From Lytechinus pictus (taxonomy: Eukaryota): a stretch of 64,000 nucleotides of DNA. The first letter of the stretch is position 1, and the number at the start of each line of letters is the position of its first letter. The translations under genes were made by a program, and so were the position numbers. Positions 6,903-46,562 of this stretch are shown here, in pieces. Below the pieces are notes generated by a model, which saw only the letters and a list, made by a program, of their open reading frames with translations, searched no databases and was not told the origin of the DNA. Location: NCBI RefSeq assembly GCF_037042905.1, contig NC_087252.1, forward strand, positions 7,006,001 through 7,070,000. The letters run 5' to 3'.

Positions 6903-7856
6903 CTTCCACCACAAAGTCCATACTACCATCAGTGCCCTGAATTTCACATCTATAGATCCCATCATCTGTTACTTCTGCACTAGAAATTGTCATCACTGAT
7001 TGTATATTTGTCAGGGTAGTTACATCAAAGTTTTTGAACTTTTCATCATCAGTGATAGGGACTGTTCCAGCAAAGATATTTTCACCTGTATTGTCATCTA
7101 CCCATAAAATTACAGGTACTGTTCCACCTGTAATATCACATGTGAGTGTGGCATCAGTCCCAGCTGCTGCTAGTGAAGTACCGGTTACAGTTGCTGTTTG
7201 CCCATTTGTTCCTGGAATAAAGTGGGTGAGAAATAAACAAATTAATTAAGATTTTCTGGTACTTGTGGTAAAGTGCCAAAATCGTTTTAAAATACACAAT
7301 CCTCAGCCTCTCACAATGTATTGCTTAAAGCTTTGGTTGCCAAGTATTAACTTGACAACTCGAAAGTCTTTCCCTTGCAAACACTGACCTAACCAAGTAA
7401 TAAAATTGACCGTTGGTTAGATGCAATTGTTCTTAACATTCAAGATTCAAGAAGTTTATTTTCATTTCCATGACAAATCAAATACAGATACAAATCAAAG
7501 TATGAGTACCAGATCAATTTTACCTCAGCATAATTATATGATATATTCGAATTACCGAAACGATTTTTTTTCCCCCAGGTTATATTTCAAAGATTTATAT
7601 GCTAAAGATTATTGTTTAGGAGATAGAGCTGCCTAGCTAAAATCTGAAAATGTTGTGTCTCACAGACCAAATCACAGACATTTTGAACAAATCCCTCATT
7701 TTGATTAGTTGCTGATCAACGACTCAGATGTAAAAATGAAATCTCGTCCTTTCGATCACTCTTAATCAATTAACTAACTTCAAGATAATTACCAATTACA
7801 AGCAGCAGAACAGCAAATCCACGTAATAAAACCAGGCCAGCCATCGTCATGGTCAT
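6903..7856 (-). CDS. Copy B: 5' part of a paralogous Ig-receptor gene (signal exon 7793-7856, V-Ig exon 6903-7211); continues beyond the left edge
   Basis: MTMTMAGLVLLRGFAVLLLVI(G) plus an intact 309-nt exon ATLTCDITGGTVPVILW...DDGIYRCEI. Splice sites match copy A, and the introns are collinear with 32080-36360. Confidence 0.87.
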
Positions 7857-10178
7857 GTCTATGGTAAGCAACATGTGGTTCTCTTCGTATTATGATTTGA
7901 TTCTTGCTAATGGAATGTTTTGACTTGTGACGATCGTCTGCGTTCAAGGAGCAGGGATGATCACACCCTATCGAGAAAACCGGGGGAGTTTTTCCCGGAA
8001 GGCTGTGCTGATCAGTAGTCTCTTGTTCCAATAGTTTATTTGTGTGTCTGTGTAAGTTTGTGTGAGGATATGGAGGCCTATAGGTGAAGTGAGGGTGTGT
8101 GTAGACGTGTGTGTAACTGAGAAAGGAAAGAAAAAAAACATATTTTTGTGCGTTTTCATTTTATGGTTATTTTCAATAATCTGGGCGATGGATGTGCGGC
8201 GACCAGGTTGCAGTACATGGAAATTATTATACTACTACTAGCAGCTTGCGATGGAAAGTAAGTTTTAAAGTAATTTGCTTCAGTTCAAGACAAATAAAAG
8301 AAAAGAGAAAAGAAAAAAAATACAAGCTCAGAAGTTGCTATAAATTTTGTTTAAAATGCAATATTTTCCCCCCTCAAATTTGCAAATGCAAATTAATGAA
8401 GAATAGAATACGCTATAATAATAACAATATGCAACATTTATATAGTGCTCAATAAAATATTGCAATTTATCTTTGTGGAATTGTGGGGGGAGGCAGTTCT
8501 AGAATTACTTCATTATGCAATTTTATTTCACGATAAACTGGAAGCTCTCTCCTTTTCTCCGAATAATCAGTGGCGTAATGGTCCAAAAGTTTAAAGGGAA
8601 TCAGATATGTGATATTGGGCAAAGTTTAGTAAAAAAAATTGTGAGCGGGCAAGCAAAAAATCCGACATTATTATTAAAAAAATACATTTTTTTTTCATAT
8701 TTTGACCTAAAAAAAATGACTACAAAATGATATTATATTTCAATCTTTTTTCTTTTATTTCTTTTTCATTCTATTCTTTCTTTTTTGGGGAGGGGTCTTT
8801 TTTTTGGGGGGGGGGGGCAAGCGCCCCAAACACCCCATCTGTACGCCTCTGCTAATAATCTATGAAAATTATATTGTTGTTAGCATTTGATGAATAATTT
8901 TCATAGAAACGACTGGTTAAGAAAACTTCTAAACACAGCCTTTCGTGAAAATCTCTAGTCCCCGGTTTTCTCGAAAGGGTGCGGCCACCCCCGTTCCGCG
9001 AACGCAGGCGATCATAACTAGCCAAATGTTTTGACTACAGATGGTTAAGACCAAGTCAAGCTCATCTCCAAGATCTAGTTTTTCAAAGGAAGGACATACA
9101 TTATATTGAAAGCATTTACGAGAGATTACCAATGATTACTATTGATTTGTTGAAAATTGCATTGGAATCGTTGAAATATTTTCACGATTAGGTGGCAATT
9201 TTTACGTTTTTGTACACGGTTTGGAAAAAAGGGGGACTGAAGCTCACCCAGCACACCCCCCTCATTTTTGCAGCCCCCTGCATTTTTATATTAACGAAGT
9301 AGTCAAATGGAACACAAACATTATAAAAATGGCTTATACTAAGTGGGCTCTGCCTTTCTTCAAGATTGTCATGGACTATTGATCATCATTATAGGCTCTC
9401 AACTTTTCTACTCCCGAGATGTTAATCCTAATCAACCAGAAATAAAAAGTTATGTACAAGTTTTGTATATTCTAATTAAACTTCTAGGAGGGTTTTGAAG
9501 TAATCGCCATCTCAGCAACCTTGCATGGGCAGCTTATCTGATTAACGTAATAAATAAATTGCATGATACCACTACCGATAACACTGTAGCTCTTGACAAA
9601 AAAAAAATCTTTAAATAAAGCAAAATCTCATGTCATGTATGGCATTTGGGGGTACACGATTTTGTACATCAGCTCGTGTTTCATGTAGCCTTTGTCATCC
9701 CTTTTCAGTGCAGGTTAATCGTGCCAAACACATTAACGTCCCGTTTTTCTCAAAGCGAGCCCTTTGATTGAATATCACTTGGTGAAAGTTCCTTTAGTAC
9801 AGACCAAGATCATTATACCTGAAATCAGTATCCTTTTGCATTGGGAGAGGATTTATTTCCAACAGAAAAAAATAACGTAGTCTCGGCATAACTTCATGTA
9901 ATTTGTTCAGTGCAGTATTTTGTGATATCATCCTAATCAGCTCTGTTGAAGCATGGCCCTGAGAAGCGGTGCCGCACCATTTATAGGCAACAACACATTG
10001 AAATTAGGTTGGTATACTAAAATGTAGAAATTTTACCAAAATTAACGAAATGTTGTTAATTTTCGAGCCTTACAACCCCTTTTTCGCTTGTTATTTTTTT
10101 CTGGGCCAAATTACAATAAACAATAAGTTCATATCATATTTTACCACACACTAAACACAATAGTACATAAAAACTCAC

Positions 10179-16579: not shown

Positions 16580-16639
16580 TCACATCTCCAGAGTAGAAGC
16601 ATACAACCCATCATCCAAGTCATTCAGAGACAAGTAACT
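16580..16639 (-). CDS. Copy A last coding exon, C-terminal tail
   Basis: TTTCACAG| SYLSLNDLDDGLYASTLEM*; conserved in copies C and D. Confidence 0.85.
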   Translation of the reverse strand, partial: SYLSLNDLDDGLYASTLEM

Positions 16640-19600
16640 CTGTGAAATAAGACAAAAATCGTTAAAATTTTAACGTCATCAAAAATTATATTTCAAACCA
16701 GTAATAACTTCAAATTTACTTCGATAATGACGGTACTTCACGGATTTAATTTATTTAGTTAGATATTTATTTATTTCCACAAAAACAATATATAATACAT
16801 GTTATAATGATCAATATGATATCAAATGCATGTCAAGAGAGATTCCTGTTAAAAGAAAAAAACTAGACTCCTTGTAATATAAATGGTACACATAAAAAAT
16901 CATACAAATTATTATACAACAAAAAACGAACAAAGAAGAGCCTTCTGTAAGATATCTGTACGACTTAAACTAGTTTTACGTGCACATCCCCAAACGACAT
17001 TCCAATAAGATAAATGTGTGTATATTCGTAAGTGAGCTCGTAATTAAAAATTTTTGGTTTTTCATATTCATGATAAATAATAATGGAAATAAGTGCAGAT
17101 GTTATTTTTTTATTCTATCTTACATATATATTGTTTTTTAATATATATTATATTATGGCATTAAAGAATTAATTGTATAATAAATCATGAATAAGATAAT
17201 ATGATAAAGAAAAGCGTAGTTGTAAAAGACACCAAGTAGTGTAAGAAAGACAAAATTGTTTTAATCTTACGTGTTTCTTTTCTAAAATCCTATCCATACT
17301 CTTCAGGATGTGATCAAAGTTACTCCGATTTTGGGGTTCCTTGTCCCAGCAACCAGTCATAACCACATACCTTTGAAATAAATTAAAGATGATGTTTATA
17401 TAGAAATATGTATATATTACATAAATGGTTAAGGAAGTATATATAAAATTGATTTAAAACATGGAATTATTAGAGGGGTAGGCCTATACACTACAGGCTG
17501 AAAATTTTATGATCTAAACAGACAGGGCTAATTCATACAAAGAAAACACTGGAAATTCCTTCAAAATCGTACAATAACAAAGGTATAATATCTTAAAGTT
17601 TTGCACTATTTTTTGGTGAAATAGTTGTACGTATGTCCACTCGAGCATACAATGATAAAGCTGATTCTATCTTCCCTTTTGTAGTATATATGAACTAAGA
17701 TTTTTTTCACATTTTGTCCGCCTAAAATAAAAAAAATTAAAATGATTGATAAGGAATGTAATCTGTGAGATATTTATTGCTGTATTTTTTTTTTTTAAAG
17801 GAAGACATATCGTATACACATAACAACAAAAATATGAAATAATTATTATTTCATGCAATTACTGAAGAAAAAAATGGGACAAAACATCATCGGCCCACAT
17901 TTTTGACGGCGTACATGTAGCTGTTTTCATTTAAAAAAATCCAATAATCTCGACATTTGTCAGATCTTGATGAAATAGGCCTTTTGCTAATAAAATGATT
18001 TTTACTATACTTTAGATGAAAATTATTTTCAACCCGGAGTACCCCTTTAGTATAGATCATTCAACTCATGTTCCCCTAGGATTGTGCGTAAAATCTATGA
18101 AGATTGATTTTTGTTAATCTTTGTTGTGAATTTGCAACATATACGGTAAATGAAATTTACGAGAGCAAACAACAAGAGAAATTCTCTATAGGTCAATCTA
18201 CAATCCTAGTAATCCTTGTCAAGCAAGTTTTAGATTTTTTTGATAGAAAATAAGTATTACACTTCTTGTGCACAGTGACGAGGACATGGCATCTGGTAAC
18301 CATTAGCAACCTCCGTCCGAACCGTGCTGAATGTCATATTTGGGTAGGGCCTTGCACCTATCAGAATGTAAAAGCAAAAATTATATTATGAAGCATCTGA
18401 ATATCATATATCTAGAAGTTGACCAAAATAAATATATATTGTTAGAAGTAGAAGTATGAACATGATGTCAAATATTGATTCCTTATAATGAATATCTCGA
18501 CACCGATAAATATATGTGCATAATTATGTGCCCAACTGAAAAAAAGGCATAAATTACAAGTTTTTTTTTGGTCCGTTTATCACAGCTACAATTACTGTGT
18601 CTAATGTTATACAGTATATTATTAATCTGACTGTCAGTCACAGGTTTAACCATACCTAACCTAAATAACTTTATTTGTAACAATCATCAATCCCTTTTAA
18701 AATGTTCAACATCACCCGGCGTTTTATATATCATTATAATGTTGATATCATTATCTTTCGAGCCGAGTAAGGATATCTTTTAAAATGTTGTTTTGATATT
18801 TCCGTCACTGTTCTTGTTGTTGTTGTTGTAGCAGCAGTAGTCATGGTAGTAAAAGTAACGATGTTGCTTTTGTTGTATTTTGCCTTTTATCATAATCATT
18901 TACCATTCTATCATCGATAATTGGTAGAAATTATCATAATCACCACAATCATTAAACCCATCGTTGTTATTTATTGATATATGACTAACATATTATTGCA
19001 TATTAGACATTTACACACAAAACTTCGTGCACATCCTTTCTTACCCAGTGTCACAATTTCCCACAAGACGATACCAAAAGACCATATGTCTCCTTCTGTT
19101 GTTTGGTCACCCGTTGCCATGGTTTCTGGTGAACTCCATCTGGATGGTTTCTATATATGACGGTGTGCAGATGACAAATAATCTTGCTATAACAATAATT
19201 CAAGCGATTGGTAATTATAATATGCAGTTAACCTATAAAATGTCAAAGATGTCTTAATACTGGCCGAAACAAGCAATAATAAAGTGGTATGGTTGCAGGC
19301 TGAGGATCAAAGTCAAGGGTCATGTGAGTTAGGGTTCCAGCCTCGCTTCATTTAGAATCATATATTTTCATTTACATTATCAAGTTATCAAATAGGAGAT
19401 TAATCTCTATGACAAGCCTACACCATAAACATTCATTATTGTAAGGCATAACGAGTCACACTTACAGCTACGTCACCAAGGAGCGATGAAGAAAGTCCGT
19501 AATCTGATATCTTGCATTGCTTTCTTTCTCCTAGCAACACATTGTGAGCGCAGAGAGCCCCGTGGATGATCTGAAGAAAAGAGAAATACACTTGCAACTC

Positions 19601-22600
19601 TGTATAGTGTTTAGTGTATTCATATACATGTATTTTGATCTCTGTGAAAGTCGACAAATTTCCCGTCTTACATCTGTGTTAAAAAAAGGAACGATAAACC
19701 CTTCCTATTCCTATTGTACTATTAGTAATACCTGTAATGTTTCCAAACAAAAATAATTTAGGTTTCTGGAAAGTATTGCTGCCGAAGGTATTTATGAGGA
19801 TATGGTTGTGCAGAGTTGCAACCCTAATTACGAAAACGATTTCTTATCTTGGACCGGTCAAGTTTTCATGTCTGACTAAAAGGGTCCCTTTCAGCTTAAA
19901 AACCGATTTTTATTTCCAAACCCAACTGCCTTCCTTTCTCCTCTTATAACCCTTTTTTGTTAAGGAATCTCATAAAAAATACCTTCTTAGATGCAAGGAA
20001 CTGCATCCCTTTAGCAGCCTGCCAAGCCAAGTTAAGTAGGGTACCCTCATCAATACGAACACCGTTTGGTTTGAGATTGCTGTACGTAGGTTGAGATTGC
20101 ACCCCTGAAGTATGTAGATGGGTAAGGAGTGTACCCCCTGAGATGAACTCATACAGAATACTACCTGCATGCGTGAATACACATAAAAACTGTGGTGTTA
20201 ACCGGTGTACATAGAGGACCACATCAGTTATTTTACACCGGTGTTGAATCGGTGGTGGTGTCATTACAACACCTTTGGTTGTTACATTTACACGCTTTGG
20301 TGTTATTTTTAATCTTTAGGGTGTAATCTTAACACCTCGGGGTGTGGTCCTATATTAACACCAACTGGTGTCAGTTTTAACACCGCAGTTTTTACAGTGT
20401 AATAGATTGTAATAGAAAGGAAAACTCTGTGACGTCATGTTTAATAATTGCATCTTCTTCATTGTAATTTAGGATAAGTATCCTTGAATTATCAAATGGA
20501 ATGGATTGTTATTGTGTCTTCTCCTTTTGTTTTGGTGTAAGAACCCCCAATGAAGAACCCCCTGGATGAGGGAAAGGGGCCAACGAACTCTTTAGCGATT
20601 AAAACAAATATTGATATATTTTTGTGGTTTCCAAGAGAACCAATTATATTCCATATTACACAATTAAGATGGTTTACGTACCTTGTTCTTTACAATATCC
20701 TAGGCATTTTACAATATTTGGTTGATCCGATAGCTCGTAAAGTACCTTGATGGCTTGAAGAACTTGTAATGATTTTGTCACGCGATCTAAGATAGTGTAA
20801 AGTACATAATGATATAATGGTATGACCTTTCATTTTAATATTCCCCTTCCGGATTGTTCACCATTGACCAATTTCTGGACAAGCAGAGAATATACCCAAA
20901 AAATTATATTATTATTATTAAAAAATGGGGCATGTTTCCCCCCTTTCAGTAACCCTGAACCCCCCCCCCCCCCCCTCCTTCTTTGATCCCGGTGAAACTG
21001 AATTCAAGTGAAAGAGAAGCCTGTGGCGTCAAAACTATTTAATTATTTGCATTGGTTTCCAATCTGCTTGTTCAGAATGACATCCTAAAACGATATGGTA
21101 ATAGCATAAATAATGAAATTAAAATTTAATTGAGATGACAAATTAAGAATGACCTTCAAATTTGAACTTCTCTCATTGTTATTAATTATTGTTAACTTTA
21201 CGAGCTACAAACCATCACCTGGTATTTGCCTAATAGCAACGTCGAGATGGTTTTGTTTTGATTGAAGGTCTCCCTTCCATACCTCGCCGAAGTCACCCCG
21301 CCCAATCGAGCCGAGTCTGGTGAAGAATGTCACGTTTTCACGGGCAATGACGAAGGAGTGGGTAGTACCAAGTTTTAACGTTGTGTATGCTGCATTGTTT
21401 TAAAACATATACATTTTCGACTAAGTACATTTAAAATACATGTACTTAAAACACCTAATCCATTATGTCTGATCTTGTGAGATTTGTAGTAAGTGTCTTG
21501 GTCAATAATATATTTCCAGAGAATATAAAGTAACTATGGATTTGAGATTAAAAAATATTTTTTATTGTAGGAGGTGAACATTTTAATGAACATTATTGCA
21601 TATAATAAAATACTAAGTTACAAGTGGAAATAACAAAATCATCAATTAACCCACTGAATATTCATGAAGAAATGCAAAAAAATAATTTATAGTGATATAA
21701 TACAAATCTTTAGAATGTCATAACATTTTTTCCCCTTTATAAAATTTGTAATGCTTTGTTTGATTTTCCTTTATCTATTGGAATAATATTATTTTCCGCC
21801 TGGAGTACCCGTTTAATAGTAGTGGTATACATCTTATAAAGAGTTCCCTCGCACCACTTAGAATAAAGATAAGGTAAACACCTGCTGACGCTTAAATATA
21901 TTTTCACTTATCCTTTTTTGTACTTTTGGCCTATATGCCATAGAGACCTAATTGTGAATTATCAGGATGATAAAGATATAATACGAATGACGTTCTTTTT
22001 TTTTTAACAGAACATTAAATCAAAGTAGTTGTACGAATGCATAATGTTTAATAGAAAAAAAAAGTTGACAATAAAATACACGTTTATTTGAATAAATAAT
22101 ATTTAGATGGAGTTTAAGATTTAATGATACACAGCTAATATGCAGAATCAATAGATAAGTTAGAAAATTTAATTCTTGAGTAATTTCTCACCTCGATTCC
22201 CACTTTGAATCATCTCATAAGCCACGTTATCATTCACTTCCTGTGGTATATTTATTTCATTGCTGTAAAACATATATAAATTGATTAGAGTTTATTTCAT
22301 CTCATGAGAAATGATATTTTTTTTTGTTAACATCCACTTAAAGGCATTTCATGGCACACATATATCAGCAACAATTACAATGAGGGAAGTGTTATATTAT
22401 TCAATGAGTATTACTCATTATTAAAGCGTTCCTAAGAATGAGATTAAGAAAAAAAAGGCTCAAAAAACGCCTTTATTATTTGAAGGATCTGGGTTTTTCC
22501 CCTTTTGGAAATAAAATCAAATATATATCTGTTGAAATGAATTTATCCTTTGTCCTCCTATTTCCGTCAGTTAATGTGTATGTATCTCAGTAAAATTTAC

Positions 22601-25600
22601 GCGTGAACGTTTGAATTTACGTTAATACTAGCTTGTGTGTTGAGGCGAAGTGTGTATGGTTAGAAATGTGAGTGTGTTCCGTTCTTTTCAATGGTATAGG
22701 ATGTTGTAAAGTTTGGTATAAATATGTGTGGTTATTTAGTATGGGCTGTTACAGTATCGGGTTTGAGGGTGTGCGCGAGTGGATGAATGTGTGGTGAGTG
22801 AGTGCGAGGTTGTACGGGCGTATTCGTAAGGTGAGCTAGAAGAGTGTGTGCATGCACGGGATGCGAGTTGTGTGTCAGAGGACGGGAGTGTTAAAGAGGG
22901 AGTGATGTGTTCGAGTGTGAGAGAGCTGTGTGTGTATGATAGGGAGCAAATGTGAAAGTGCAGGCAGTGTCTGTAAAAGTGTGTGTATCTTTAAAGATAA
23001 GTGTGAGTGCGTGGGTGTGTGTGAGATTATCTGAGTAGGTGTATGGGTGAGTGTGCGTGTTTTTTTCATGTGGGGGAGAGAAAATGGTGTGCAAAATTTG
23101 TGGGTTTGGTTTAATGGAGATATGTACATATTATAGATTCATTGTAGTCATGTAAAATGTGAGCGTGGGTGTTGCCTTCTAGGGTGTGTGTGTATGTGTG
23201 TCCGACAAAATATTTTTCCTTCTACTTACCTCTTATTATTCTTTGAATCATGGAACTCTAGTTTAGTGGATAAATATATAAATATACACGTTTACATTAG
23301 AGTGATGAAGAAAAAAAATGTAGCCATATGTAAACTGAGATGGCAAAATAAATTCAAGAGAGCACTCGAGGTCAAGATGCTCAAGATTTTATATACCTTT
23401 GCTATCAATTTTCGGTTTTATATCCCCTTGATAAAACATTAACGTATCGATGATCATTTAATATCCCACCTACTTGAATTATGGTATAGTAATTCTAACA
23501 CGATCTTACTAAGCGGAAATATGCTCAGATCTAGTTAACAAACCTTCTTTAGATAAACGACAAGACACGATATGTGTAGTGAGGGAATAATAATGTTGCT
23601 TTAATGTGTATTTTTATGATCATCAGAAAAAATACATTCCAACTTTGCACCTTTACAAATATTAGACGAGGAACACCTTTGAAGTTGCACCTTTGAACAT
23701 GTTCCTCTTGTGTTGGAGTTATACTTTTTTAAATTGGTATGACTTTAGGTAACATGTCCATTGTTTTACCTCGTCTATGTAGTTAAGTTAAACAAGGGTT
23801 ATTACATTACATTACTTCTTCTTTTACATTCACATTTACTCTATGTGAATATAACTACTCAGTAATCACCTGGTTTGGTTTTTCCCCTAAGAAGAATGAA
23901 CTGAACAATGTTGACGATGATAGAAGCTACTAAGAGGATGGCTAAAATAGCTATTCCAGCAGATGCTCCAGAACTCAAAGGACATGGTGTAGGCTCGGGT
24001 GTAGTCTCTGGTTGGTGAGAGAGTTTTATATCAGATGTTAATATAGATTGTGGAATTTAATTCATATGAATTAATTCGTAAACCTGTAAAATCCGATTGA
24101 TCATAGATTATAGTTCAACCATAATCATAGATTACACTACAAACATACAGCAAGAGGTAGAAGGTCCATGCTGCAACCCAGTTTTCGGGACGACATTCTA
24201 TAATAAAACCCGTGCAGTATGTCAGCCATCTATGGTCTCATTTCTAAATCTAATTATATGTCCATAATTATTTTCAATCTTCAAATTTGCCGCAAAACAT
24301 ATCACAAAATAGTAAAATAAATCACTGTCCTAAACTGAATTTCCTTTAAAAGACAAGAAGAAAAACGTCTGGGCCCGGATTCACAAGGAGGAATGACTAA
24401 GTTCTATAGAGCTATAATAACTTAGGGCTGAGCTAAATTCTAGGGGGTTAGAATTTGTATTTCACGAAGAAGGGTAAGGTTAACCCAATAGTTAAAATAG
24501 TAGTCAATTAAATATAATCAAATATAATAATACATGGGTTTACAACTCATCAGTTGCATAAGTAGTCGACAACTGTTAGGATGCACCATATACGGGTAAT
24601 GGGCTACATTTTTATTTTACAAAGTTTCAAAGTGGCGAAGATGAAAGTCTAATTTTGAAGAATGTGATATCATATCTACAATAATTTCCTACTAAATCTG
24701 CATCTCTCCCACTTGGGTTTTGCGCCACCCCCATTATTACATATATTTCACAGTATTTTATTCATTCATTGTTCATGTTCAAACATTAAATGAATGTGTT
24801 TGTGCTGGTGATGTGGTGTACTAAAGAGGTGCCTCGGCCTTTTGTCGGTATGTTTGAGGAAGAGTGTCTTTGAAGATATTCCTTTTAACGAAAAAGTATT
24901 TCACTAACTTATGGCAGGTATGATTGGTATGATAGACCTGCAGTATAATGACTTACTGAAACCATTTATGATAAATATAAATGAAATTATAATGATGATA
25001 ACATTAAAAATGATAATAGAGATAGCATTTATAATTATTGTTATAATACGAACAATAGAAATAATGATCACAATGATAATAACGGTGATAATAAAAATAA
25101 CATTAAATGATAATAAAACTAACAATGATCAGAATAATAATTATAATAATGACAATAGTATCATATAATGTAAATACCATTAATAATAATTGGTATTTCG
25201 TAGCACCATCAACCTAGAAATATTCTATTCGGCTGCGCACTGTTTTTTTTTTTGTCATTGTAAGATGGAAAAGGGACTTCCTAAAAAATATCCACCACCG
25301 AAAGAGGAACCTTGTAAATAAAATTTTGAAAGAAATGAATTTACACTTCGTCTGGAGCCCAGGAAAACAATAGTAAACGGACTTTGGACCCTATTATATC
25401 TTGAATACCAAAGCGAATTCGCATGATGTGTGCAAATAAATATCATATTGACATTGATCCTTCCATATACACTGCCATGCACAGTTTATCTATAGAGAAA
25501 TGTGAGATTCTGTTACGGATACAAGTTTAAACCTGAATTTGAGGCATTTTCAAGCATTAAGTTTCGTGCAGAATTGCATGTCGATTAATGTTTTCATTCT

Positions 25601-28600
25601 ATCGTCGTTAAGAGATAGTACATAACAATATTGAAGAATGCACAGGCACAGTGACTACTTCCTGATATAAACTCGTCAAAAAAAGTTTGGAAATCTGACT
25701 TTGATCGATAATTGTTCCTCGGTTTTAGTTTATATTAATGTGTAATATATACTAATCAATAGATCATTTAATTCTCTTTAAAATTATACCCTACATGATG
25801 TGATTGTGGTTCACACGGAGGTACAGTGCCTTGAAATGTGGGGGCAAGGTCAAAATTCAAAAGTTGCAAAATTACACAATATTGAAACTCACTGTTCTTT
25901 TTATCCGTGATGATGAGTGAGTTATTCAGCGTTTTTTTTTTCATGCACCTTAACATCAACATTAATATGGAATCAAACACACATCTGCACAAGCAAACAC
26001 ATAACAAACAAGCATACATGCATGGGTATTTCAAAACACGACTCAAACTATGTTATCTCACAGAACCATGCATGACTACATAAACCAAAACAAAACATCA
26101 ATAATGAAGAAATAGGGGCTTGATTTGAATGGATTTTCATCTCTTTTGACACATAAAAAAAGAATAATGTTCTTTAATGACCCTTCGTGATTATTTCTGC
26201 TCCTTTTGCAGCTTTTCAATTCAGACCTCATCCAAAACTTTTGATTAATGTTCTTTTCGTTATGGCATGATCATAACAAGCATGGTATCAATTTAAATGA
26301 TCTTTTGAATGATATCAAATATACATTGTGTGAAATTGGGATAAATTAATGGCCAAACTCAAATTTCCTAACTTTTTGAAGGGTATATTTAGAAATGTAA
26401 TCATGCTTACTATATATCAATCACTATGGCTTTTGTAGTGCACAATCTTTTCGCCAAATATCTATGCTCCAGGCTTGATGACAATCCCCTCGTTTGATTT
26501 GCCCCATGCAGTGAGTAACTTGTCTGCCTTCACACAAACCATATGTATAATATGAAATTTTAACAAAAGGCGTAACCTTAACTTTCTTTGATTGTATATA
26601 CAAAGACAAGGGAGAAGCAAGTAATTCTTAAAATAATAGGAGCATTTTGGGGGTATCACCCGCCCACCCCCTCTAAATCTAAAATTTTATATATTCAATT
26701 CTATATCAAGGTAATGAACCAAATTTCGACAACTAACGTCCACATATGGGGTACATTCTGATGGTTTCATTATTTTTCATTATTTGTTGATAAATTTTCA
26801 GCTCGTGCACTTTGCTTTCTCAAATAACATCAAGTGGGGAAGTGACTTTTGGTGCTCAATAGCCCACACTTATTCAATTCAGCATTTATTTCGAATTCAT
26901 TAAAAATACAAGTTGATATCATGATCATGTACACACAAAATCAGTGCCACTACTTTTTGGACATACTGGACCACTGTCATTTTTACTTGTCCCAATGTAT
27001 TACTTGACCTTTCAAACCTTAGTTTAAATACCACAATCTTATCTCTCAGGTGGATTTTTAACGAAGTATGTCAATTTTCTTAGTATCAGCAGTAAATTTA
27101 GACTACATTTTTGAAGCCATCTTGGATTTTTGGACACACTGGACCACTGACTGTCTTTTTTAACTTGTCCTCATGTATTATTTTACCCTTCAAACCAACA
27201 GCAAAATCATATTTTCCCAGGTAGATATCAAATGGACGATGTCTATTTGCGGTCATTCATTTTAGAATCCATTTTTGAAGCCATCTTTTTGGACATACTT
27301 GACCGCTGGAATTGAGGTAATAGTTGAATTGTGGATTATAGGGCTTTGTCAGCCATTTTGGACGCCATTTTTTTATTTTTTAGGTACCAGCTGGTCTACA
27401 TGTTTTTGCTCAATTGTCTTTTTTTTTCTTTTACCCCTGTTACCCATTTAAACCATGAAATATGCACCGAAATTTGGAAGTTTAGTGTGCAAAGTGTGTT
27501 ACATCTTGTAACCGGAAATTTCCGTTTCTTAAACTTATTTTGGCTTAACGCTCTTTTCCTATTTATCATTATTCATCACAAATATAGGAAGGTCGCAATA
27601 TGTAGCTGGATACGTTATGAGGGCAACATCTATTGTTTCGATTATATTCTTATTCAATTGTTTATTACATTTTTAACTAACACATGAAGAAATAAATAGT
27701 CAGTAATTTCCATATGAAAACTTTTGGGGACTATAGCGCACGAGACCTTTTTTTTTTCACATTCGTAATTTCTAACCCCCATCCCCCCCCCCCTACTCAC
27801 ACGCACTAGGCAGAATATTAGTGTACACCACAGAACACTTGACTGGTCAATACCGAATATGTACCTGAATTCGTCTTTTTGAATAGCCACACCACCCCCA
27901 CCCCTTGAATTGAAAAAAAAATTGATGTAATAAATAGGGACATGAATAAACTTTTTATTTAGTATTATTTCGTATTTACGACTGGTGTTATTCGTTAAGG
28001 TGTATTAGGTGCATATTAATAAAATGATATTACCAAAAATGTGTTTAGAAAATCAAACTGACATTGTCACCAAGAATAAACAATAAATAACCCAAAACAG
28101 ATGAAAGAATGATACAAGTACAAAATTGGGTGAAGGAAAAGAAGATTATCAAAGGTCAACATACCCTCCGTTGGATTCGAGGTTTGATCGTCTATTTCAG
28201 TTGGCGTTCCTTTCAAATAAGTTCGATCAAAGAAAACAAATATTGGAAAGTGTTACATGTATGTCTGAAAATTGATAAATTTCATCAACTAATATCAAAC
28301 TAAACAGTTTTTTTCCCTGATGAGTTCATGATTAGTTTATGATATTGTAAGTTTTTCATCATATTGTTTTGTTGACCCCCCAAAAAATAAAATGCAAAAC
28401 CAAATCTAAATAAAGTTGAAAAATATAATGAGTTCGATCAAAGAAAAAGAAATATTTGAAAGTGTTACAGGTAAGTCTGCTAAACTTGGGTGAAAATTGA
28501 TAAAGTTCATCAACTAATATCAAACTAAACAGTTTTCCCCTAAGTTCATGATAAATTTATGATATTGTAAGTTTTTCATTATATTGTTTTTATATTTGGT

Positions 28601-31600
28601 CTTTGTTGACCCAATAAAACAAATAAATACAAAAATAGATATAAATAAAGTTGAAAAATATAACCCTGGTTTACATCAGTAATTACATTTCCAATGTAGT
28701 GTCTAAAACAAAGCATAATACACCATAGTGTTTTACGGTGATTAACTGACGACGTTATCATGATTATGATACATAGTCAATGGCATATTGTACACGTTTC
28801 TTTCACCTCAATCCCAAATAAAGACATGGCTTCTCCTTGATACCATTTTGAAGTTCATGTGTATAATATCAATTGAGTAATTATTTTGAGGAGGTGAAAA
28901 AGAGGATATGACCATCTGCACAATGTAATTTGAACTGAATGATGATTCTACGCACTGTTTGAAGACATTGAAATTTGTGAGATACTTCCTATTTTTGTGC
29001 AAGCGCCGTGAGCGTCTAGTTGTGGCGGATACCGGCGCTATTTTAATACAAGAACTCATCATCATCATCTATAACAACAAATAAAATGTTGCTTATAATT
29101 CACAATTTCGCGCAAATTTGTTATAAAAGGATTAAAGTAGGCCTACATACCAGTTGTCGGGGAAGGATTGGTGGTTCCTGATATTGAAAACAACAATAAT
29201 GTATTTAAAAAAAAATAAAGAGTTATAATTAGAATAATAATTTTTACATGAAAAAAAAAATAAATCTCCATCGTCTCCCAGTGAATGTAAGATATTTGAC
29301 AAGAAATTAGCACACCTCACAACCTTTCTGTATGCCGCCATCGGGTCTTTGTGGTTACATTGCTCACTGAGTTTGGGGAAGGTGTGAAATGGTTTGTAGA
29401 AAACCACAATCAAAATTTCCATGTTGATATTTGAAATGGCAATTTCTCATTTTTATTAGAAAATAGATAACAAATGGAAAAAATGGGATAGGGTTAATTT
29501 GATTGCTCTTTCTTCGCATTGTATATATGTACTAGCTTTCAAACAAAATGAGCCTCATGAATGCTTGTTATTGTCATCATTTTGTTTATCTCTTTTGTCT
29601 CTTTTGTATTTTTTTGGGGGGGGGCGAGGGGTCTATACAAAGGCAATTTCATCTACATACATGACATACACATACAAGTCACTTATACACTTTAATGCAC
29701 AGCCAAAAACACAAGCGTGACCCACCCCCGCAAACCCTCACACACACTCATGTGCGCGCACACATCCTTGAACTAAAGGCTGGTTTCTGGATATATAAAA
29801 CAATCGGCAACAAATTACATCCTGCATCTCCTGACCGACAGAAGGAAGGGGCTTCGGGGCTATAAGAAAATATGAAACCTGCGGGGTCACAAGAAGAAAA
29901 TCCTTAAAGGACAAGTCCACCCCAAGAATAAGTTGATTTGAATAAAAAGATAAAAATCCAACAAGCATAGCACTGAAAATTTCATCAAAATCAGATGTAA
30001 AATAAGAAAGTTATGACATTTCAAAGTTTCGCTTAATTTCACAAAACAGTAATATGCACATCCTGGCTGGTATGCAAATGTAGGAACTGATGACATCACT
30101 CACTCACTATTTCTTTTGTATTTTATTTTATGAAATATGAAATATTCTAATTTTCTCCTCATTGTCAAGTGATACAACGATTGATTCCTCCCTGAACATG
30201 TGGAATTAGCATTGTTTAATACTATATGGTTTAGTCAAGTTGGTCCTTATTGTCAAATCTATATACAAAATGAAAAATTGTATAATTCAAACAATAACAA
30301 AACAAAAGAAATAGTGAGTGATGGACATCATCGACTGACTCACATAGTTGTGCATATCACTGTTTTGTGAAAAATAAGCGAAACTTTACAAATGTCATAA
30401 CTTTCTTATTTTACATCCGATTTTGATGAAATTTTCAGCACTATCCTAGATTGATTTTTCTTTATTTTTCAGGTCAACATTTTCCTGGGGTGGACTTGAC
30501 CTTTAACAAGAACAAGCTTATCACATGGAAAGGTTGATATCGTGAGCTTTATAAAAGCGACAACAAAGACAGATTTTTAGGGTAATGACAAGAATAAGAA
30601 TTTTGAAGGTATATTTTCTTACTTATTGGGTCATATGTAACTGCTGCACTAAGTGATGTATTTCCAAGGTAATTACCAGCCATACACGTGTACGTTATTC
30701 CAACTTCAGGATTTGAAGTAGTGATATCATTCACACTATTAATTGATTCATGTATCAGGGTACCATTAGAGAATATATAGTAGTTTCTCATTATTGGAGT
30801 AGGTTCATTATGTGCGGTACATGTTACTCTGATGTCTGTTCTATCGGTTATATAATCAACAGTGACAGTAGTACCAGCAGTAGATGGAGAGGCTATAGGT
30901 TGGAAAAGAAAAACAATCACAATGAAATAATAAATAACAGAAAGCTGCCTTCCAATTAATATATCATTGTATGATACCAACTCTCAATTAAATCAGGAGA
31001 AATTCCAATACACGATCAAATAGGTTACCATATTGTTTAAAGTGGCATCCATTCCATAAAAAGTAGTTAAAGAGGAAAGAAAAAAAATCAGACGAGTAGA
31101 TAGTTGAACGTTTGGAGAAATGACGAACAATAAGGACGTTATGGGTTTTTAAAAGATTGGTTATCACTGTCCCCATGGATACTACGAATTGGCCGCAGTT
31201 GTGATTTCATATTTATATAAGGCAATGGCAACTTTCCATTCACTCCAATAAATGAAATTACTTTTTCTTTCAAAAGTTTTACTTCACATTATAATTTATT
31301 TTAAGGACATAACACAATATGCAACCTTTAATTCAGTATGACTACTGCCCCAGGTTGCATGTAAACGACTTTAAAAATTACTCTTCCTACTTACTATGAA
31401 TGTCTAAATCTCTTGATTCCTGACTTTCGAGCTCTGTAAGCTGATATCCAGTAGCGCGACATTCCAAAGTCTGTAAATGATTTTCTTGAGTTGCTGGGAA
31501 AGTGAACGTACTCATTGTATTAGATAATGGTGGATTAGATGGTGTTGGTGGGTGTGTTTGCACTATCGTCTTGCCATTGCCATTAGTCTGTTCAACACCA

Positions 31601-34600
31601 TTCAGATACCATGTGATGTTAACTTGTGGTTTGCTTCCAACAACTTCACATGTTGCTTCATACATATCCTCTTCACTGCTACTTACAAAACTTCTTACAG
31701 TTGGTCCAGTTAAAGTTCCTGGAGCTAAAATCAGAGAAAAATATTTACAAGTGACGATTTAGTAATACCCATTACTTTGGTTTATACCAACTTTTATATG
31801 GGACCCTGCAGAAAACAAGTGGAATACTAGTCTTAAAAATAACTAAATAATTATAGGAATAAAGAAAATTTTGACAGAATTAAAAGGTGATTTGTCGATT
31901 TTGAAAGACCACCGAATTATGATTTCATGTAAAATTAAGAAATGGGAAAATGGGGTCATAATATTATCAACAGCATCACATGTTGCTTCATACATATCCT
32001 CATGATTTACCAAGGTACTTATCAGTCAATGTCACACTTGGTGCAGCTAGAGAAAGAATAATGCAGGTTAATCCATTTACCATACATGATAATATCACTT
32101 ACCCTTTAGCTTATGTTTAGGAAAGGCCTCTAAATCTAAATCGTAGGTCCTAACTGAAATCAATAAAAATTACATTCGCATGAACTCACTTCGTAGCTTA
32201 TTTTTCAGTTTGCATGACTGGTATCAGATTAAATTTCTTCCTCTCTTTTTATAATTTCCTTTTCTTCTCTCTCTTTTTATACTCTCCCTCTTGCTCCCTC
32301 CCTTGATGTAAATAGCTACTGTAGATCCAGCGCAATTTTCAATTGTCTCTTATTTCATGTGTGTGTATTTATGCTGAGGTAGTATGAACTACCGATAAAA
32401 AAACATAGAATTTAAAAACTTAGAAATTTCGTCAAAATCGGACAAGGAATAACAAATGTATTAAATTTATAATTTCCCTATTTCGTCAACGTTCTATACA
32501 TGTCTTCATGAATATTCAAGGAGCAAACTGATGATGTCATATCCGCACCTGTTTTTTTTCTTTTACATGAAATTATGTTTTTCAAAGTTTGTCCTACGAT
32601 AACTAAAATTGATTTAGTGCATTAATTAGATATTCATCGCTGCAAATTATTTTATCATAAGGGATACATATCATATACACTCGTATCGAAATATGGAATA
32701 ATATACGATTATTTGTAATAAAATTAGAAAAAGGAAAGTGTGAATGTGACAAGGGTGACGAGACGTCCCGTACTTTAAGGGGCATTCTTTCATATCACAT
32801 ATTGTCCAGTGTCCCGTACGACGATGCCCGTGACGCCGTTTTGTCTCGTATTTCATGATTTTGAACACATTCAAGAGAGAATATTCTTGCATTTTACTTT
32901 GTTCTCTAAAGGGAAACTCACGATAAACAGATTTGTAAATCTTTTATGTATTATTTTTTTGAAAATTTCCGTGATACCTACTAAGTAGAGAAAGACTATG
33001 TAATCAGCAATAGATATGAACGAAGAGTGTGCGTTCATGCTCATATTATAGCCTTTCAAAAATGTGTATTCAATAATGGCCTTCATTCTAATTGGATTAG
33101 TGGCATAATGAACCGAACATGTAGAGGGACCACAACATAACTTAAGTGGGAAAATTCGGGCCTTTTTTGAAGGGCAATCTAATTTTGTGATATATCCAGA
33201 ATCATGTATATATTTCACCCCTTTCCCTTCCCTGTTTCCCCTTATGTTATTCATTTATTTATTTATTATTAATTTGTTCGTTTTCTTTGTATTGGATTCC
33301 CCCTCCCCTTCTGGGAGCACAAAATTCTCCCCATGTATACACCGGCAATTTCGATTTATTAAGTTGTGATATGATGGCATATTCAGCATCATCAACTTTT
33401 GCTTTTAAGAAAATAGCTAGGAAATATGGGAACACCTGTCTATCATTTTGAACATTTGTTTATATTTCTTTCCTTTTTTTCAGTACCAAATTTTGTACTG
33501 CCATATTTCATATTCCTAAAGTGGACTTAGCGAAACGAGCAAAACCAATGAGAGAAGGATTTTTTTTTGCAAATCCGAACAGAACAAAATTTGTATCCAA
33601 ATTTCAAAAGTCAAAATTTAATATTATGAACACGGAAACTCTCACGGAAAGGACAATACTAACAAACATTTATACACACATGCCTTATATTTTATATGAC
33701 CTGATTGCTTGTCTTTCCATACTCCTTTCCTATATTGTAATTCGGCAAAATTTAGACCAAAAGATGTGGTAGACAGGTAAATTGAAATTAAATCACATCT
33801 ATTCTCTTTGCGTTGTTTTTAAAGAAGCAGATAATGGATAAATTCATCAGAATTATTTGCGGTATCTCTGTAAATGAATCAAATCATGTGTCGATTACAG
33901 CATAAAACTAATCAACTACTCAACTCAAGACACCGGACATACTGAAACTTCCCGTCCTACACCAGTCCAAGTAAAATTAAATGAATGAACAGAGAGGTCC
34001 AACGGAACCATATTTTTTTCTCATTCCAAAAAAAAAAATCTTGAGAACATATTAATGAGGTTATTTTGTATAATTTAGAAATAGGGGCGACAGCCCGGCG
34101 AGGGAATTGGTATTTAATAATTAATAATTTACTATCGGACCAACTAATGTAGATAGTGAAGGGGCTTGGTGGATTCCGTATATTCTGAGGACTAGGGAGG
34201 AAATGGGAAAAGGAGAGAAAACTAAAGGAAAGGGTGAATTATATTATAGTTTTCTAAATTAAGGTGTCGAAATCTAGAACACAAAATTAGTTTTTTAATA
34301 AAATTTCATTGCAGTACCACTTCAATCATGTAAAGATATAACTTTGTTGCAGTACATTATATTGTTGACCACTTTATTATAAACATTGATCCTCCATGTT
34401 ATAACCTTGCTACTGTTACCACATATAGATATGAATATGGCATTGTCATTCCTCTGTCTTTGCATACTGCAAAATATTAATCCTATAAAGACTGTTATAA
34501 TATTGACTAAACACTTTATTATAATCATGCTACTGTAACCTTTATAATCTATTTGCATGTGTATGTATAAAAATTTCTTTATTTTTTAATACCAATGCAA

Positions 34601-43166: not shown

Positions 43167-43230
<64 letters not shown>

Positions 43231-45246: not shown

Positions 45247-45399
45247 AAAAACAATTGTATATTTGACATGTTCAGAGTAGACGCATACAGTCCTTCATCC
45301 AAGTCATTCAAAGACAAGTAACTCTGTGAAATAAGACAAAAAATATCACAGTTTTAAGATCAATAAATGTTGATTTCGCATTGACTTCAATATGTTGAC

Positions 45400-45840
45400 T
45401 TCGAAACCTTCATCTCACCAACCCCAGGTTATAAATAACTCATAAACAATTCGACTTTATGGTCCTGATCTTTGGAACAACTTTCCAGACAATAGTCATG
45501 TTCAACAATATTTAAGACCAGTTGTTAGTTGCACCTGTGGGTGACATGTTTTGAGTGTGAATGTGTGTGTTAGGGTGTGTTTGTGTGCGTATGCTTGCGT
45601 GTGGGTAATGATCCTGTTGTGATATTTAAATACCTATACATTTTTATTATTTTTTTCTTATAGTTGTTCCATGTTTAAGTAAAATATCATACGCAGGGGC
45701 CCCTGATTACAAGTTGTGCTTCCTTGGGGTCCCAAACCCGTCATTTTTCTCAGTTCTTTATGATGTAACCATTTATTTTCTTCGTACTTTGTTCTCCTTT
45801 TTAGACTGGTTTGAATAAATTCAATTCAATTCAATTCAAA
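45400..45840 (+). mobile_element. Degraded CR1-like LINE 3' end; also at ~61885-62325
   Basis: YGPDLWNNFPDN remnant, GGGGCCCC...GGGGTCCC stem, AATAAA followed by (TTCAA)n. Confidence 0.7.
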
Positions 45841-45939
45841 TAATTTTTAAGTAAAAAAAAGTAAGTTCATATACTAATTGAAAGCTACTATTAAAAGAAA
45901 AAACATCGAATAATATGAATCCCCTCTTTAAGTTAATAC

Positions 45940-46245
45940 TTCAACTGCGCTCTACTTCACCCGCACCAGCACCTGCATTGCACCCACTTGATCAATGAAG
46001 AAAGACATTACGAGCCCGCCATCATATTCAAGCTTAACCGCTCACGATGGCGGTCTCCTGCATTCGTTTAAACTGATATTTTCTTTTAATTCAATAATGC
46101 TTCTTGTTGATGTTTATTTTTCATTGCTTTATTATGACTATTGTTTTATTGTTTTGTAAAACTGAAATATGTATCACCTTTGTAGATGTTATGTTGTATA
46201 GTTATCCTGAATGCAGAAATATGATAAAATCAATCAATTAATCAA
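45940..46245 (+). mobile_element. Non-LTR element 3' end with (TCAA)n tail; also at ~62425-62730
   Basis: CCGCCATC...GATGGCGG stem, AT-rich UTR, ATCAATCAATTAATCAA tail. Confidence 0.55.
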
Positions 46246-46562
46246 GGTACTATGAAAATGAAATATGAGTGAACGCAGAGGTGAGCTCCTTTTTCAAACT
46301 ATTTAGCTTTACATAATCATGATAATGGCAATAGGTCATTGAGGTAGCAGCGATCATCTTTCTGTTTCGTACAGTATTACTGATCCCATCATTTTATGGA
46401 ATTGAAAAAAAAAATTGTGAATATATCACTTATAACACACAACAAGTGGTATAAGAAAATGATATGATATTTTCAATCTTACATGTGTTTTTTCTAAAAT
46501 CATTTTCATACTCTTCAAGGATGTGATCAAAGTTACTCCGATCTTGGGGTTCCTTGTCCCAG

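What the first reader, a model, noticed from the sequence alone, without database searches (positions are those of the whole stretch)
19045..21389. Catalytic residues are lost while the kinase fold and reading frame are kept
Seen: beta3 Lys->Arg (VAIR, codon 21229-21231); no Glu at the alphaC position (LQAIKVL); HRDLAARN->HGALCAHN, removing the catalytic Asp; DFG->DYG; only 16 residues and no Tyr between DYG and SPE. The Gly loop, catalytic-loop Asn, DYG Asp and C-lobe are intact. Hand comparison of A vs C gives 4 silent and 2 replacement codons in exon 19045-19150, and again 4 and 2 in the shared part of the last exon. Inference: a maintained pseudokinase that may still bind nucleotide, rather than a decaying gene.
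Basis: partly seen in the sequence, partly recalled or inferred. Interest (0 to 1): 0.8.

Follow-up and report, generated by a model that had tools for sequence, protein, structure and literature searches.

The report
Conserved dead-kinase Ig receptor, sea urchin
This is the kinase-like domain of an expressed sea-urchin (Lytechinus pictus) Ig-domain membrane receptor that lost its catalytic residues in an ancestor of sea urchins and has been kept under purifying selection since, so it is a maintained pseudokinase and not a decaying gene.

Summary
On the minus strand, exons 21389-21219, 20786-20682, 20164-19983, 19570-19466 and 19150-19045, plus 18357-18261, 17370-17271 and 16639-16580, encode an intact tyrosine-kinase-fold domain. 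It has VAIR (Arg codon 21229-21231), no alphaC Glu, HGALCAHN for HRDLAARN, DYG for DFG, and a 16-residue, Tyr-free activation segment.

The spliced product is 100% identical to residues 420-726 of a RefSeq protein called 'fibroblast growth factor receptor 2-like' of Lytechinus pictus. That protein has a signal peptide, three Ig domains, a transmembrane segment, the pseudokinase and a Tyr-bearing tail. RNA contigs confirm seven of the eight splice joints directly; E5-E6 rests on loose contig ends.

- The same substitutions occur in all echinoid relatives examined, across five species.
- These relatives form one clade (support 100/99) with three subfamilies, each holding Diadema and camarodont members.
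- The nearest sea-star, amphioxus and insect relatives keep K/E/HRD/DFG.
- Kinase-domain dN/dS is 0.18 to 0.41, against about 0.9 for the V-Ig and third Ig domains of adjacent paralogues.

Nucleotide binding remains untested. The scan noted a similar array 309 kb away.

The parts
16580..36425 (-). Whole gene A. It encodes a 726-aa type I receptor: signal peptide, V-set Ig, C2-set Ig, third Ig, TM, juxtamembrane, pseudokinase, C-tail.
   Evidence: tblastn of P0023 onto the window. Pfam domains of P0023. The spliced kinase-tail model is 100% identical to P0023 residues 420-726.
21219..21389 (-). Kinase exon E1: Gly loop GRGDFG and beta3 V-A-I-R (Arg codon AGG at 21229-21231).
   Evidence: Sequence and translation. 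RNA joints 21389/22192 and 20786/21219.
20682..20786 (-). Kinase exon E2: alphaC helix with Ala at the position of the conserved Glu.
   Evidence: Helix at model residues 63-74. RNA joint.
19983..20164 (-). Kinase exon E3: hinge, alphaD-alphaE and a short insert.
   Evidence: Used as the query that found the family.
19466..19570 (-). Kinase exon E4: catalytic loop H-G-A-L-C-A-H-N (19564-19541) and D-Y-G (19504-19496).
   Evidence: One RNA contig matches this exon with no difference and bridges both neighbouring joints.
19045..19150 (-). Kinase exon E5: end of the short activation segment, SPE, alphaF.
18261..18357 (-). Kinase exon E6 (alphaF-alphaH region).
   Evidence: Frame-consistent splice, confirmed by RNA joint 17367/18258 read with the cut +3.
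17271..17370 (-). Kinase exon E7: CW motif and the end of the kinase domain.
16580..16639 (-). Last coding exon E8: tail S-Y-L-S-L-N-D-L-D-D-G-L-Y-A-S-T-L-E-M, then the stop codon.
   Evidence: RNA joint 16639/17271. Translation. The tail motif is conserved across the family and in active relatives.
22192..22264 (-). Juxtamembrane exon. Together with the start of E1 it forms the motif YEMI-x6-YTTL.
23871..24008 (-). Transmembrane exon.
45264..49008 (-). Relic 'copy C': E5-like exon 48903-49008, E7 fragment 46484-46562 (frameshifted), E8-like 45264-45323 (stop lost). It has no E1-E4 and no E6.
61749..63046 (-). Second relic, 97% identical to relic C: E7 fragment 62969-63046 and E8-like 61749-61808.
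49971..51134 (+). Retroelement ORF with a reverse-transcriptase domain. It lies next to the point (49096/49097) where the homology of relic C to gene A stops.
6904..7874 (-). First two coding exons of the next tandem paralogue (P0021). Its pseudokinase lies beyond the window start and is read in locus L001.

Best explanation
The region encodes the cytoplasmic pseudokinase domain of an expressed, three-Ig-domain transmembrane receptor of Lytechinus pictus.

Shown here:
- An ancestor of the sampled sea urchins (Diadema plus camarodonts) lost the beta3 Lys (to Arg), the alphaC Glu and the HRD Arg-Asp (to Gly-x).
- In this subfamily the DFG Phe became Tyr and the activation loop shortened to 16 residues and lost its Tyr.
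- The fold and the derived residues have since been kept by purifying selection.

Inferred: the domain does not transfer phosphate. It acts as a rigid scaffold or allosteric module. The signal would be carried by conserved tyrosine motifs on either side of it. These are an ITAM-spaced YEMI-x6-YTTL motif before the domain and a Y-L-S-L-x7-Y tail after it. They would be phosphorylated in trans by another kinase when the Ig ectodomain engages a ligand.

The retained Gly loop, catalytic-loop Asn and DYG Asp make nucleotide and metal binding plausible but unproven.
For: Gene integrity and expression.
- Intact frame and AG/GT borders at all eight kinase and tail exons.
- Spliced RNA contigs cover seven of the eight joints. 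One contig matches the HGALCAHN exon exactly.
- The spliced model is 100% identical to the annotated protein P0023.

Fold.
- Pfam kinase-domain match of 221 bits over 6-257 of 258.
- AlphaFold model with pLDDT 81.5 and pTM 0.82 and a canonical kinase topology. Foldseek top hits are FGFR, PDGFR, Tie2 and Fes kinases at E about 1e-23.

Conservation of the dead state.
- The same motif changes occur in every echinoid member. Sea-star, amphioxus, insect and mollusc relatives keep VAxK, Glu, HRD, DFG and an activation segment of 21-24 residues, most with a Tyr in it.
- The dead kinases form one clade (100/99) with three subfamilies, each holding Diadema and camarodont members.
- The subfamily of P0144 and P0092 has K->R and HGN. 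P0144 still has DFG, P0092 has DVG, and both keep a longer loop. This looks like an intermediate state.

Selection.
- dN/dS of the kinase domain is 0.18 (p=6e-11), 0.41 (p=0.03) and 0.27 (p=0.016) in three comparisons.
- V-Ig and Ig3 between adjacent paralogues give 0.91 and 0.89.
- Exons are 96% identical between adjacent paralogues and introns 87%.
- The derived His, Gly, Asp and Tyr codons differ synonymously between copies.
- The residue replacing the catalytic Asp varies (A/T/S/N/L/H), while the neighbouring HG and LCAHN do not vary within this subfamily.
- The JM and tail tyrosine motifs are conserved. Tail dN/dS is 0.05 between adjacent paralogues.
Against: - There is no biochemical evidence. 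Loss of activity is inferred from residues only, and some kinases that lack canonical residues still catalyse.
- A dN/dS of 0.18-0.41 indicates constraint but, to my knowledge, is looser than usual for active kinase domains.
- Gene conversion among tandem copies may blur orthology. The ectodomain of the L. variegatus comparator is far more diverged than its kinase part (dS above 1 against 0.24).
- Three 2026 RNA-seq runs showed no exon coverage in the 6% of reads sampled, so expression may be low or tissue-specific.
- The partner kinase and the role of the tyrosine motifs are conjecture.
- Subfamily II has a degenerate Gly loop. Nucleotide binding is therefore not a family-wide necessity.
Confidence: 0.85

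Rival explanations
1. Copy-specific decay: the gene is a young pseudogene whose kinase domain is drifting, and the open frame is a matter of time.
For: The locus lies in a tandem array that does hold decayed fragments. Relic C and its near-copy lack exons and carry frameshifts. Family annotations in S. purpuratus include chimeric or truncated models.
Against: - Open frame, canonical splice sites and spliced RNA.
- The same substitutions are fixed in five species and three subfamilies.
- dN/dS is significantly below 1 in three independent comparisons.
- Exons are much better conserved than introns.
Confidence: 0.03
2. Atypical but active kinase: catalysis persists through non-canonical residues, for example Arg replacing the beta3 Lys and the conserved His or Cys of L-C-A-H-N acting in place of the HRD Asp. 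This would resemble the weak activity reported for HER3 or the displaced lysine of WNK kinases (both from general knowledge).
For: - The Gly loop, the catalytic-loop Asn and the DYG Asp (the metal- and nucleotide-binding residues) are kept in all members of this subfamily.
- L-C-A-H-N is invariant in subfamilies I and III.
Against: - Three catalytic positions are lost together.
- The position of the catalytic base varies freely (A/T/S/N/L/H).
- The His and Cys are replaced (L-R-A-S-N) in subfamily II, which is equally conserved.
- The activation loop is shortened and lacks Tyr.
Confidence: 0.08
3. Nucleotide-independent scaffold: the domain is a pure protein-interaction module that no longer binds ATP. 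The conserved pocket residues serve only fold stability.
For: The beta3 Lys-alphaC Glu pair is missing. Subfamily II has lost the Gly-loop glycines (G-V-T-P-F-G) yet is conserved from Diadema to Lytechinus.
Against: GxGxFG, Asn and the DYG Asp are retained throughout subfamily I across Diadema and camarodonts. That is hard to explain by fold stability alone.
Confidence: 0.3

Closest known systems
HER3/ErbB3 (vertebrate receptor pseudokinase)
   Same: It is a membrane receptor whose kinase domain lacks the catalytic Asp and the alphaC Glu but keeps the fold, the Gly loop, Asn and the DFG Asp. HER3 signals through tail tyrosines phosphorylated by a partner kinase (general knowledge). The present protein has the same pattern of retained and lost residues, and conserved flanking tyrosines.
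   Different: HER3 keeps the beta3 Lys and DFG and has an EGFR-type ectodomain. This protein has Arg at beta3, DYG, a shortened Tyr-free activation loop and Ig ectodomains. No active paralogue exists inside the echinoid clade to serve as an obvious partner. It is not a relative of ErbB beyond the tyrosine-kinase fold.
PTK7/CCK4/Off-track (Ig-domain receptor pseudokinase)
   Same: The architecture is the same: Ig ectodomain, single TM and a catalytically defective tyrosine-kinase domain conserved over long times. CCK4 is listed as a pseudokinase family in PMC8662651.
   Different: PTK7 is a single-copy, pan-metazoan gene with seven Ig domains and, from memory, a different motif pattern with an altered DFG. 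The present family is echinoid-restricted as far as sampled, tandemly expanded, has three Ig domains and arose independently. Orthology to PTK7 was not tested directly.
Cad96Ca/RET-like and sea-star or amphioxus Ig(-FN3) receptor tyrosine kinases (nearest active relatives)
   Same: These are the best non-echinoid sequence matches, at 33-40% identity. They share the C-terminal D-Y-[IL]-x-L-x7-Y tail motif. They are joined to the dead clade in an unresolved fork of the tree.
   Different: All keep VAxK, the alphaC Glu, HRD, DFG and an activation segment of 21-24 residues, most of them with a Tyr in it. They are separated from the dead clade by a stem of 0.68 changes per site.
Fibroblast growth factor receptor 2 (the RefSeq product name of this gene)
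   Same: Three Ig-like domains, a TM and a tyrosine-kinase-fold domain. FGFR kinases are among the top structural matches.
   Different: Only 28-30% identity to FGFR kinase structures, no better than to PDGFR, Tie2, Fes or Met. The catalytic residues are absent. The name comes from automatic annotation, and relatives in the same clade are variously called Tie-1-like, Cad96Ca-like, Fer-like or angiopoietin-1 receptor-like.

Membership tests
Protein tyrosine kinase fold (Pfam PF07714) | Full-length match to the profile above the gathering score | tested here: met
   221 bits against a cut-off of 23.1, covering profile positions 6-257 of 258 in P0023. The AlphaFold model has a kinase topology, with Foldseek E about 1e-23 to solved tyrosine kinases.
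Catalytically competent tyrosine kinase | Beta3 Lys (VAIK) that pairs with the alphaC Glu | tested here: not met
   Arg at beta3 (codon 21229-21231) and Ala at the alphaC Glu position.
Catalytically competent tyrosine kinase | HRD catalytic Asp and the tyrosine-kinase signature HRDLAARN | tested here: not met
   H-G-A-L-C-A-H-N, aligned by HMMER to HRDLAARN of EGFR, ZAP-70 and EphB2.
Catalytically competent tyrosine kinase | DFG Asp and catalytic-loop Asn (metal ligands) | tested here: met
   D-Y-G and the Asn of C-A-H-N are present. They are invariant in subfamily I.
Catalytically competent tyrosine kinase | Measurable phosphotransfer | not testable with these tools
   This needs a recombinant-protein assay.
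[quoted passage not shown] | Absence of the VAIK Lys and/or the HRD Asp and/or the DFG Asp in an otherwise kinase-like domain | tested here: met
   Two of the three are absent (Lys and the HRD Asp), and the alphaC Glu is absent too.
Pseudokinase maintained by selection, as opposed to a pseudogene | Open frame, expression, cross-species conservation of the degraded state, dN/dS below 1 | tested here: met
Nucleotide-binding pseudokinase | ATP or ATP/cation binding by thermal shift or structure | not testable with these tools
   Only indirect evidence: the Gly loop, Asn and DYG Asp are conserved in subfamily I, while the Gly loop is degenerate in subfamily II.
FGFR family (RefSeq name) | Orthology to FGFRs and FGFR-specific kinase similarity | tested here: inconclusive
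   There is no preferential similarity. FGFR, PDGFR, Tie2, Fes, Met and RET structures all match at 26-34% identity. The nearest sequences are Cad96Ca-like and other Ig-RTKs. Bona fide FGFRs were not placed in the tree.
ITAM-bearing immune-type receptor | YxxL/I-x6-8-YxxL/I in the cytoplasmic part, phosphorylated and bound by a tandem-SH2 kinase | tested here: inconclusive
   The motif Y-E-M-I-x6-Y-T-T-L is present in the juxtamembrane region and conserved in camarodont subfamily I. Diadema has spacing 9. Phosphorylation and Syk-type binding cannot be tested here.

The most novel reading that the evidence does not exclude
Sea urchins carry an undescribed class of germline-diversified recognition receptors. 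They are tandem arrays of genes in which fast-evolving V-set and other Ig ectodomains (dN/dS about 0.9 between neighbours) are wired to an ancient, strongly conserved dead tyrosine-kinase domain, flanked by ITAM-like and tail tyrosine motifs. On this reading the pseudokinase is the fixed signalling scaffold that recruits Src- or Syk-type kinases. That would make it an invertebrate counterpart of ITAM-coupled immune receptors, built from a former receptor tyrosine kinase.
Probability: 0.3. Interest if true: 0.75.

Novelty: new member of a known kind. Interest (0 to 1): 0.5.

Why it matters
Receptor pseudokinases such as HER3, PTK7, RYK and ROR are few, and each has taught something about kinase-independent signalling.

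This is an independently evolved family. It is restricted, as far as sampled, to sea urchins. It has many members per genome and a graded series of degeneration across three subfamilies. It therefore offers a natural experiment on which kinase features remain under selection after catalysis is lost.

It also flags a systematic mis-naming in RefSeq, where members are called 'FGFR2-like', 'Tie-1-like' or 'Cad96Ca-like'. Anyone counting active RTKs in echinoderm kinomes would be misled.

The contrast between a conserved dead kinase and diversifying Ig ectodomains in tandem arrays makes the family a candidate for the large innate recognition repertoire for which sea urchins are known.

Tried and rejected
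- Searching the family with single exons against Pfam gave only marginal hits. It became useful once the full-length protein P0023 was available.
- Rfam found nothing in 16-37 kb.
- The three 2026 RNA-seq runs gave no exon coverage at 6% sampling, so all expression evidence rests on run X1's contigs.
- Seven literature searches found no description of this family (reads 30, 31). The terms covered sea urchin and pseudokinase, sea urchin kinome, Cad96Ca and urchin, ITAM, IgSF and lineage-specific expansion.
- The sea-urchin kinome paper (PubMed 17027740) and the pseudokinase survey PMC6997932 are not held in the library. Prior mention there cannot be excluded.
- I considered relic C as a second functional paralogue. 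I rejected this because exons are missing, it is frameshifted and it has lost its stop codon.
- I considered L. variegatus P0030 a simple orthologue and rejected that too. Its ectodomain dS exceeds 1 while its kinase dS is 0.24, so the comparison is valid only for the kinase and tail exons.
- No member of the family was found in sea stars, a brittle star or other phyla. The hits there are active kinases. Cidaroid urchins, sea cucumbers and crinoids were not represented among the hits, so the age of the loss is bounded only by the split between Diadema and camarodonts.


Full report
**What is in the sequence**

The window is AT-rich, intron-bearing animal DNA. On the minus strand, eight exons with AG/GT borders join into one open frame of 307 codons:

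| Exon | Coordinates |
|---|---|
| E1 | 21389-21219 |
| E2 | 20786-20682 |
| E3 | 20164-19983 |
| E4 | 19570-19466 |
| E5 | 19150-19045 |
| E6 | 18357-18261 |
| E7 | 17370-17271 |
| E8 | 16639-16580 |

RNA-derived contigs of run X1 show seven joints directly. These are the joint to the upstream juxtamembrane exon (21389/22192) and E1-E2, E2-E3, E3-E4, E4-E5, E6-E7 and E7-E8. The E5-E6 joint is seen only as loose contig ends at 19043 that match the start of E6 with one mismatch. One contig matches exon E4 without a single difference and bridges both of its joints.

The spliced product is 100% identical to residues 420-726 of P0023. NCBI calls this 726-aa protein 'fibroblast growth factor receptor 2-like isoform X2 [Lytechinus pictus]'. 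Mapping P0023 back onto the window shows that the gene runs from 36425 to 16580. Its parts in order are a signal-peptide exon, a V-set Ig exon, a C2-set Ig exon, a third Ig exon, a mini-exon, a transmembrane exon, a juxtamembrane exon and the eight kinase and tail exons.

**Check of the observation**

Each motif statement is correct.
- Beta3 is V-A-I-R, with the Arg codon AGG at 21231-21229.
- The alphaC helix has Ala where active relatives have Glu, and no acidic residue within the helix until its last turn.
- The catalytic loop is H-G-A-L-C-A-H-N. HMMER aligns it residue for residue with HRDLAARN of EGFR, ZAP-70 and EphB2.
- DFG is D-Y-G.
- Sixteen residues without Tyr separate DYG from SPE. 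Active relatives have 21-24, and most of them carry a Tyr there.
- The Gly loop, the catalytic-loop Asn, the DYG Asp and the C-lobe are intact.
- Pfam's tyrosine-kinase profile is matched from position 6 to 257 of 258 at 221 bits.
- An AlphaFold model built on a 52-sequence alignment has pLDDT 81.5 and pTM 0.82. Its nearest solved structures are FGFR, PDGFR, Tie2, Fes and Met kinases.

There are 4 silent and 2 replacement codons in exon E5. In the last exon there are 4 silent and 2 replacement codons, plus loss of the stop codon.

**What copy C is**

The window holds a segmental duplication. The stretch 298-19238 is repeated at about 32077-49096 at 68-90% identity in blocks. Part of that copy is repeated again at 56-64 kb at 97%.

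Copy C has an E5-like exon (48903-49008), a fragment of E7 and an E8-like exon. It lacks any equivalent of E1-E4 and of E6.
- The 5' part of its E7 is replaced next to a 160-bp tandem repeat, with a net +4 nt.
- It carries a further +1 nt insertion.
- Its stop codon has been lost.
- Its homology to gene A ends at 49096/49097, next to a retroelement with a reverse-transcriptase ORF at 49971-51134.

Twelve changed codons could not carry the inference.

**Better tests of the inference**

*Family and phylogeny.* A search of 1.84 billion representative proteins with exon E3 found 16 proteins. The nearest were all sea-urchin proteins. Three word-indexed searches then collected the family.

In an alignment of kinase domains, every echinoid member has Arg at beta3, no alphaC Glu and HG-x for HRD. 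The species are L. pictus, L. variegatus, S. purpuratus, Diadema antillarum and D. setosum. The nearest sea-star, brittle-star, amphioxus, insect, mollusc and coral relatives have VAxK, Glu, HRD and DFG.

A maximum-likelihood tree puts 27 representative dead kinases in one clade (ultrafast bootstrap 100, SH-aLRT 99) on a stem of 0.68 changes per site. The clade splits into three subfamilies, each holding both Diadema and camarodont sequences. The loss of Lys and of HRD therefore predates that split, which to my knowledge is of the order of 200 million years or more.

| Subfamily | Example proteins | Beta3 | Catalytic loop | DFG position | Other |
|---|---|---|---|---|---|
| III | P0144, P0092 | Arg | H-G-N-L-C-A-H-N | DFG (P0144), DVG (P0092) | longer activation segment |
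| II | P0013, P0091, P0048 | Arg | H-G-N-L-R-A-S/N-N | DYG | degenerate Gly loop |
| I | this gene (P0023) | Arg | H-G-x-L-C-A-H-N | DYG | invariant 15-16-residue, Tyr-free loop |

This reads as a stepwise series.

*Selection.* I fetched the loci of the adjacent paralogue P0021 (L001, which overlaps the window), of the L. variegatus relative P0030 (L002) and of a Diadema species pair (L003, L004).

| Comparison | Region | dN/dS | Fisher p |
|---|---|---|---|
| Gene A vs L. variegatus P0030 | kinase domain | 0.18 | 6e-11 |
| Gene A vs adjacent paralogue P0021 | kinase domain | 0.41 | 0.03 |
| D. setosum P0042 vs D. antillarum P0046 | kinase domain | 0.27 | 0.016 |
| Gene A vs adjacent paralogue P0021 | V-Ig | 0.91 | 0.68 |
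| Gene A vs adjacent paralogue P0021 | third Ig | 0.89 | 0.82 |
| Gene A vs adjacent paralogue P0021 | C-tail | 0.05 | 0.0056 |

Kinase exons are 96% identical between the two adjacent genes, and the introns between them are 87% identical. The derived His, Gly, Asp and Tyr are encoded by different synonymous codons in different copies. The residues, not just the DNA, are being kept. The position that once held the catalytic Asp varies freely (A, T, S, N, L, H). That is what one expects if no catalytic base is needed.

**How it most likely works**

*Shown.* The domain is a conserved, transcribed kinase fold that lacks three residues needed for phosphotransfer. It sits between conserved tyrosine motifs.
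- The juxtamembrane motif Y-E-M-I-x6-Y-T-T-L is formed across the JM/E1 exon joint. It is present in camarodont subfamily I members with a complete N-terminus, and Diadema has a spacing of 9.
- The tail motif Y-L-S-L-x7-Y is shared even with active amphioxus and insect relatives.

*Inferred.* The domain acts as a scaffold or allosteric module. The receptor's signal depends on another kinase that phosphorylates these tyrosines, much as HER3 depends on its partners. No active paralogue exists inside the echinoid clade, so a cytoplasmic Src- or Syk-type kinase is the more likely partner.

Conservation of GxGxFG, Asn and the DYG Asp across subfamily I suggests that nucleotide and metal binding persist. 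The degenerate Gly loop of subfamily II shows that this is not required family-wide. I put about 0.85 on 'maintained, catalytically impaired pseudokinase'. I put roughly even odds on nucleotide binding and on the trans-phosphorylation model.

**Rivals**

- Copy-specific decay is contradicted by all of the above.
- An atypical active kinase cannot be excluded without an assay. It is unlikely given the triple loss and the variable base position.

**Comparison with what is known, and novelty**

The protein works like the receptor pseudokinases HER3 and PTK7/CCK4 but is not a member of either family. Its nearest active kin are Cad96Ca-like and other Ig-RTKs, which share its tail motif.

The gene is annotated in RefSeq, but under names that imply an active FGFR, Tie or Cad96Ca receptor. 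I found no paper describing the family as pseudokinases.

I class it as a new member, in fact a new lineage-specific family, of a known kind. Earlier notes of this scan describe the same gene as an Ig-V receptor with a dead kinase and an ITAM-like motif. They also note a similar tandem family 309 kb before the window. I tested the gene extent, the motif and the ectodomain replacement bias, and they hold.

Noticed in passing
window 20185-20400 (intron between E2 and E3): A repeat of about 215 bp inside the intron is covered at very high depth in all four RNA data sets. The reads run off into unrelated sequence on both sides, so it behaves as an abundant, transcribed dispersed repeat (SINE-like). 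Rfam gave no hit.
   Followed up: partly
window 49097-51300: A retroelement. Direct repeats of 647 bp at 98% identity (49097-49743 and 50654-51300) overlap a 387-aa ORF with a reverse-transcriptase domain (49971-51134, + strand). It sits exactly where the homology of relic C to gene A ends.
   Followed up: partly
window 46518-46996 and 63002-63524: A minisatellite with a 160-bp unit replaces the 5' part of the E7-like exon in both relic copies.
   Followed up: partly
window 48903-49008 and flanks: The E5-like exon of relic C is 94% identical to gene A and keeps its frame and AG/GT borders. The whole block that contains it (18564-19238 vs 48438-49096) is only 83% identical. Either the relic was disabled late or a conversion patch refreshed this exon.
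   Followed up: no
window 6904-7874 and locus L001: The next gene downstream (P0021, 732 aa) is a full-length tandem paralogue with an intact pseudokinase. Its V-Ig and third Ig domains differ from gene A mostly by replacements (dN/dS about 0.9).
   Followed up: yes
locus L002 (L. variegatus P0030): The kinase exons of P0030 are close to gene A (dS 0.24) but its ectodomain exons are very distant (dS above 1). This suggests exon-block shuffling or conversion that homogenises the kinase part while ectodomains stay diverse.
   Followed up: partly
window 22600-23140 (intron between the TM and JM exons): A long low-complexity stretch whose minus strand is rich in C and A. Its translated frames are rich in His, Thr, Pro and Ser, and there is a marked GC-skew peak in 22001-24000.
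   Followed up: no
proteins P0001 and P0018 (S. purpuratus models): Some public gene models of the family are chimeras. P0001 strings two partial kinase N-lobes around Ig domains. P0018 carries a reverse-transcriptase domain. This shows that the arrays are hard to annotate.
   Followed up: no
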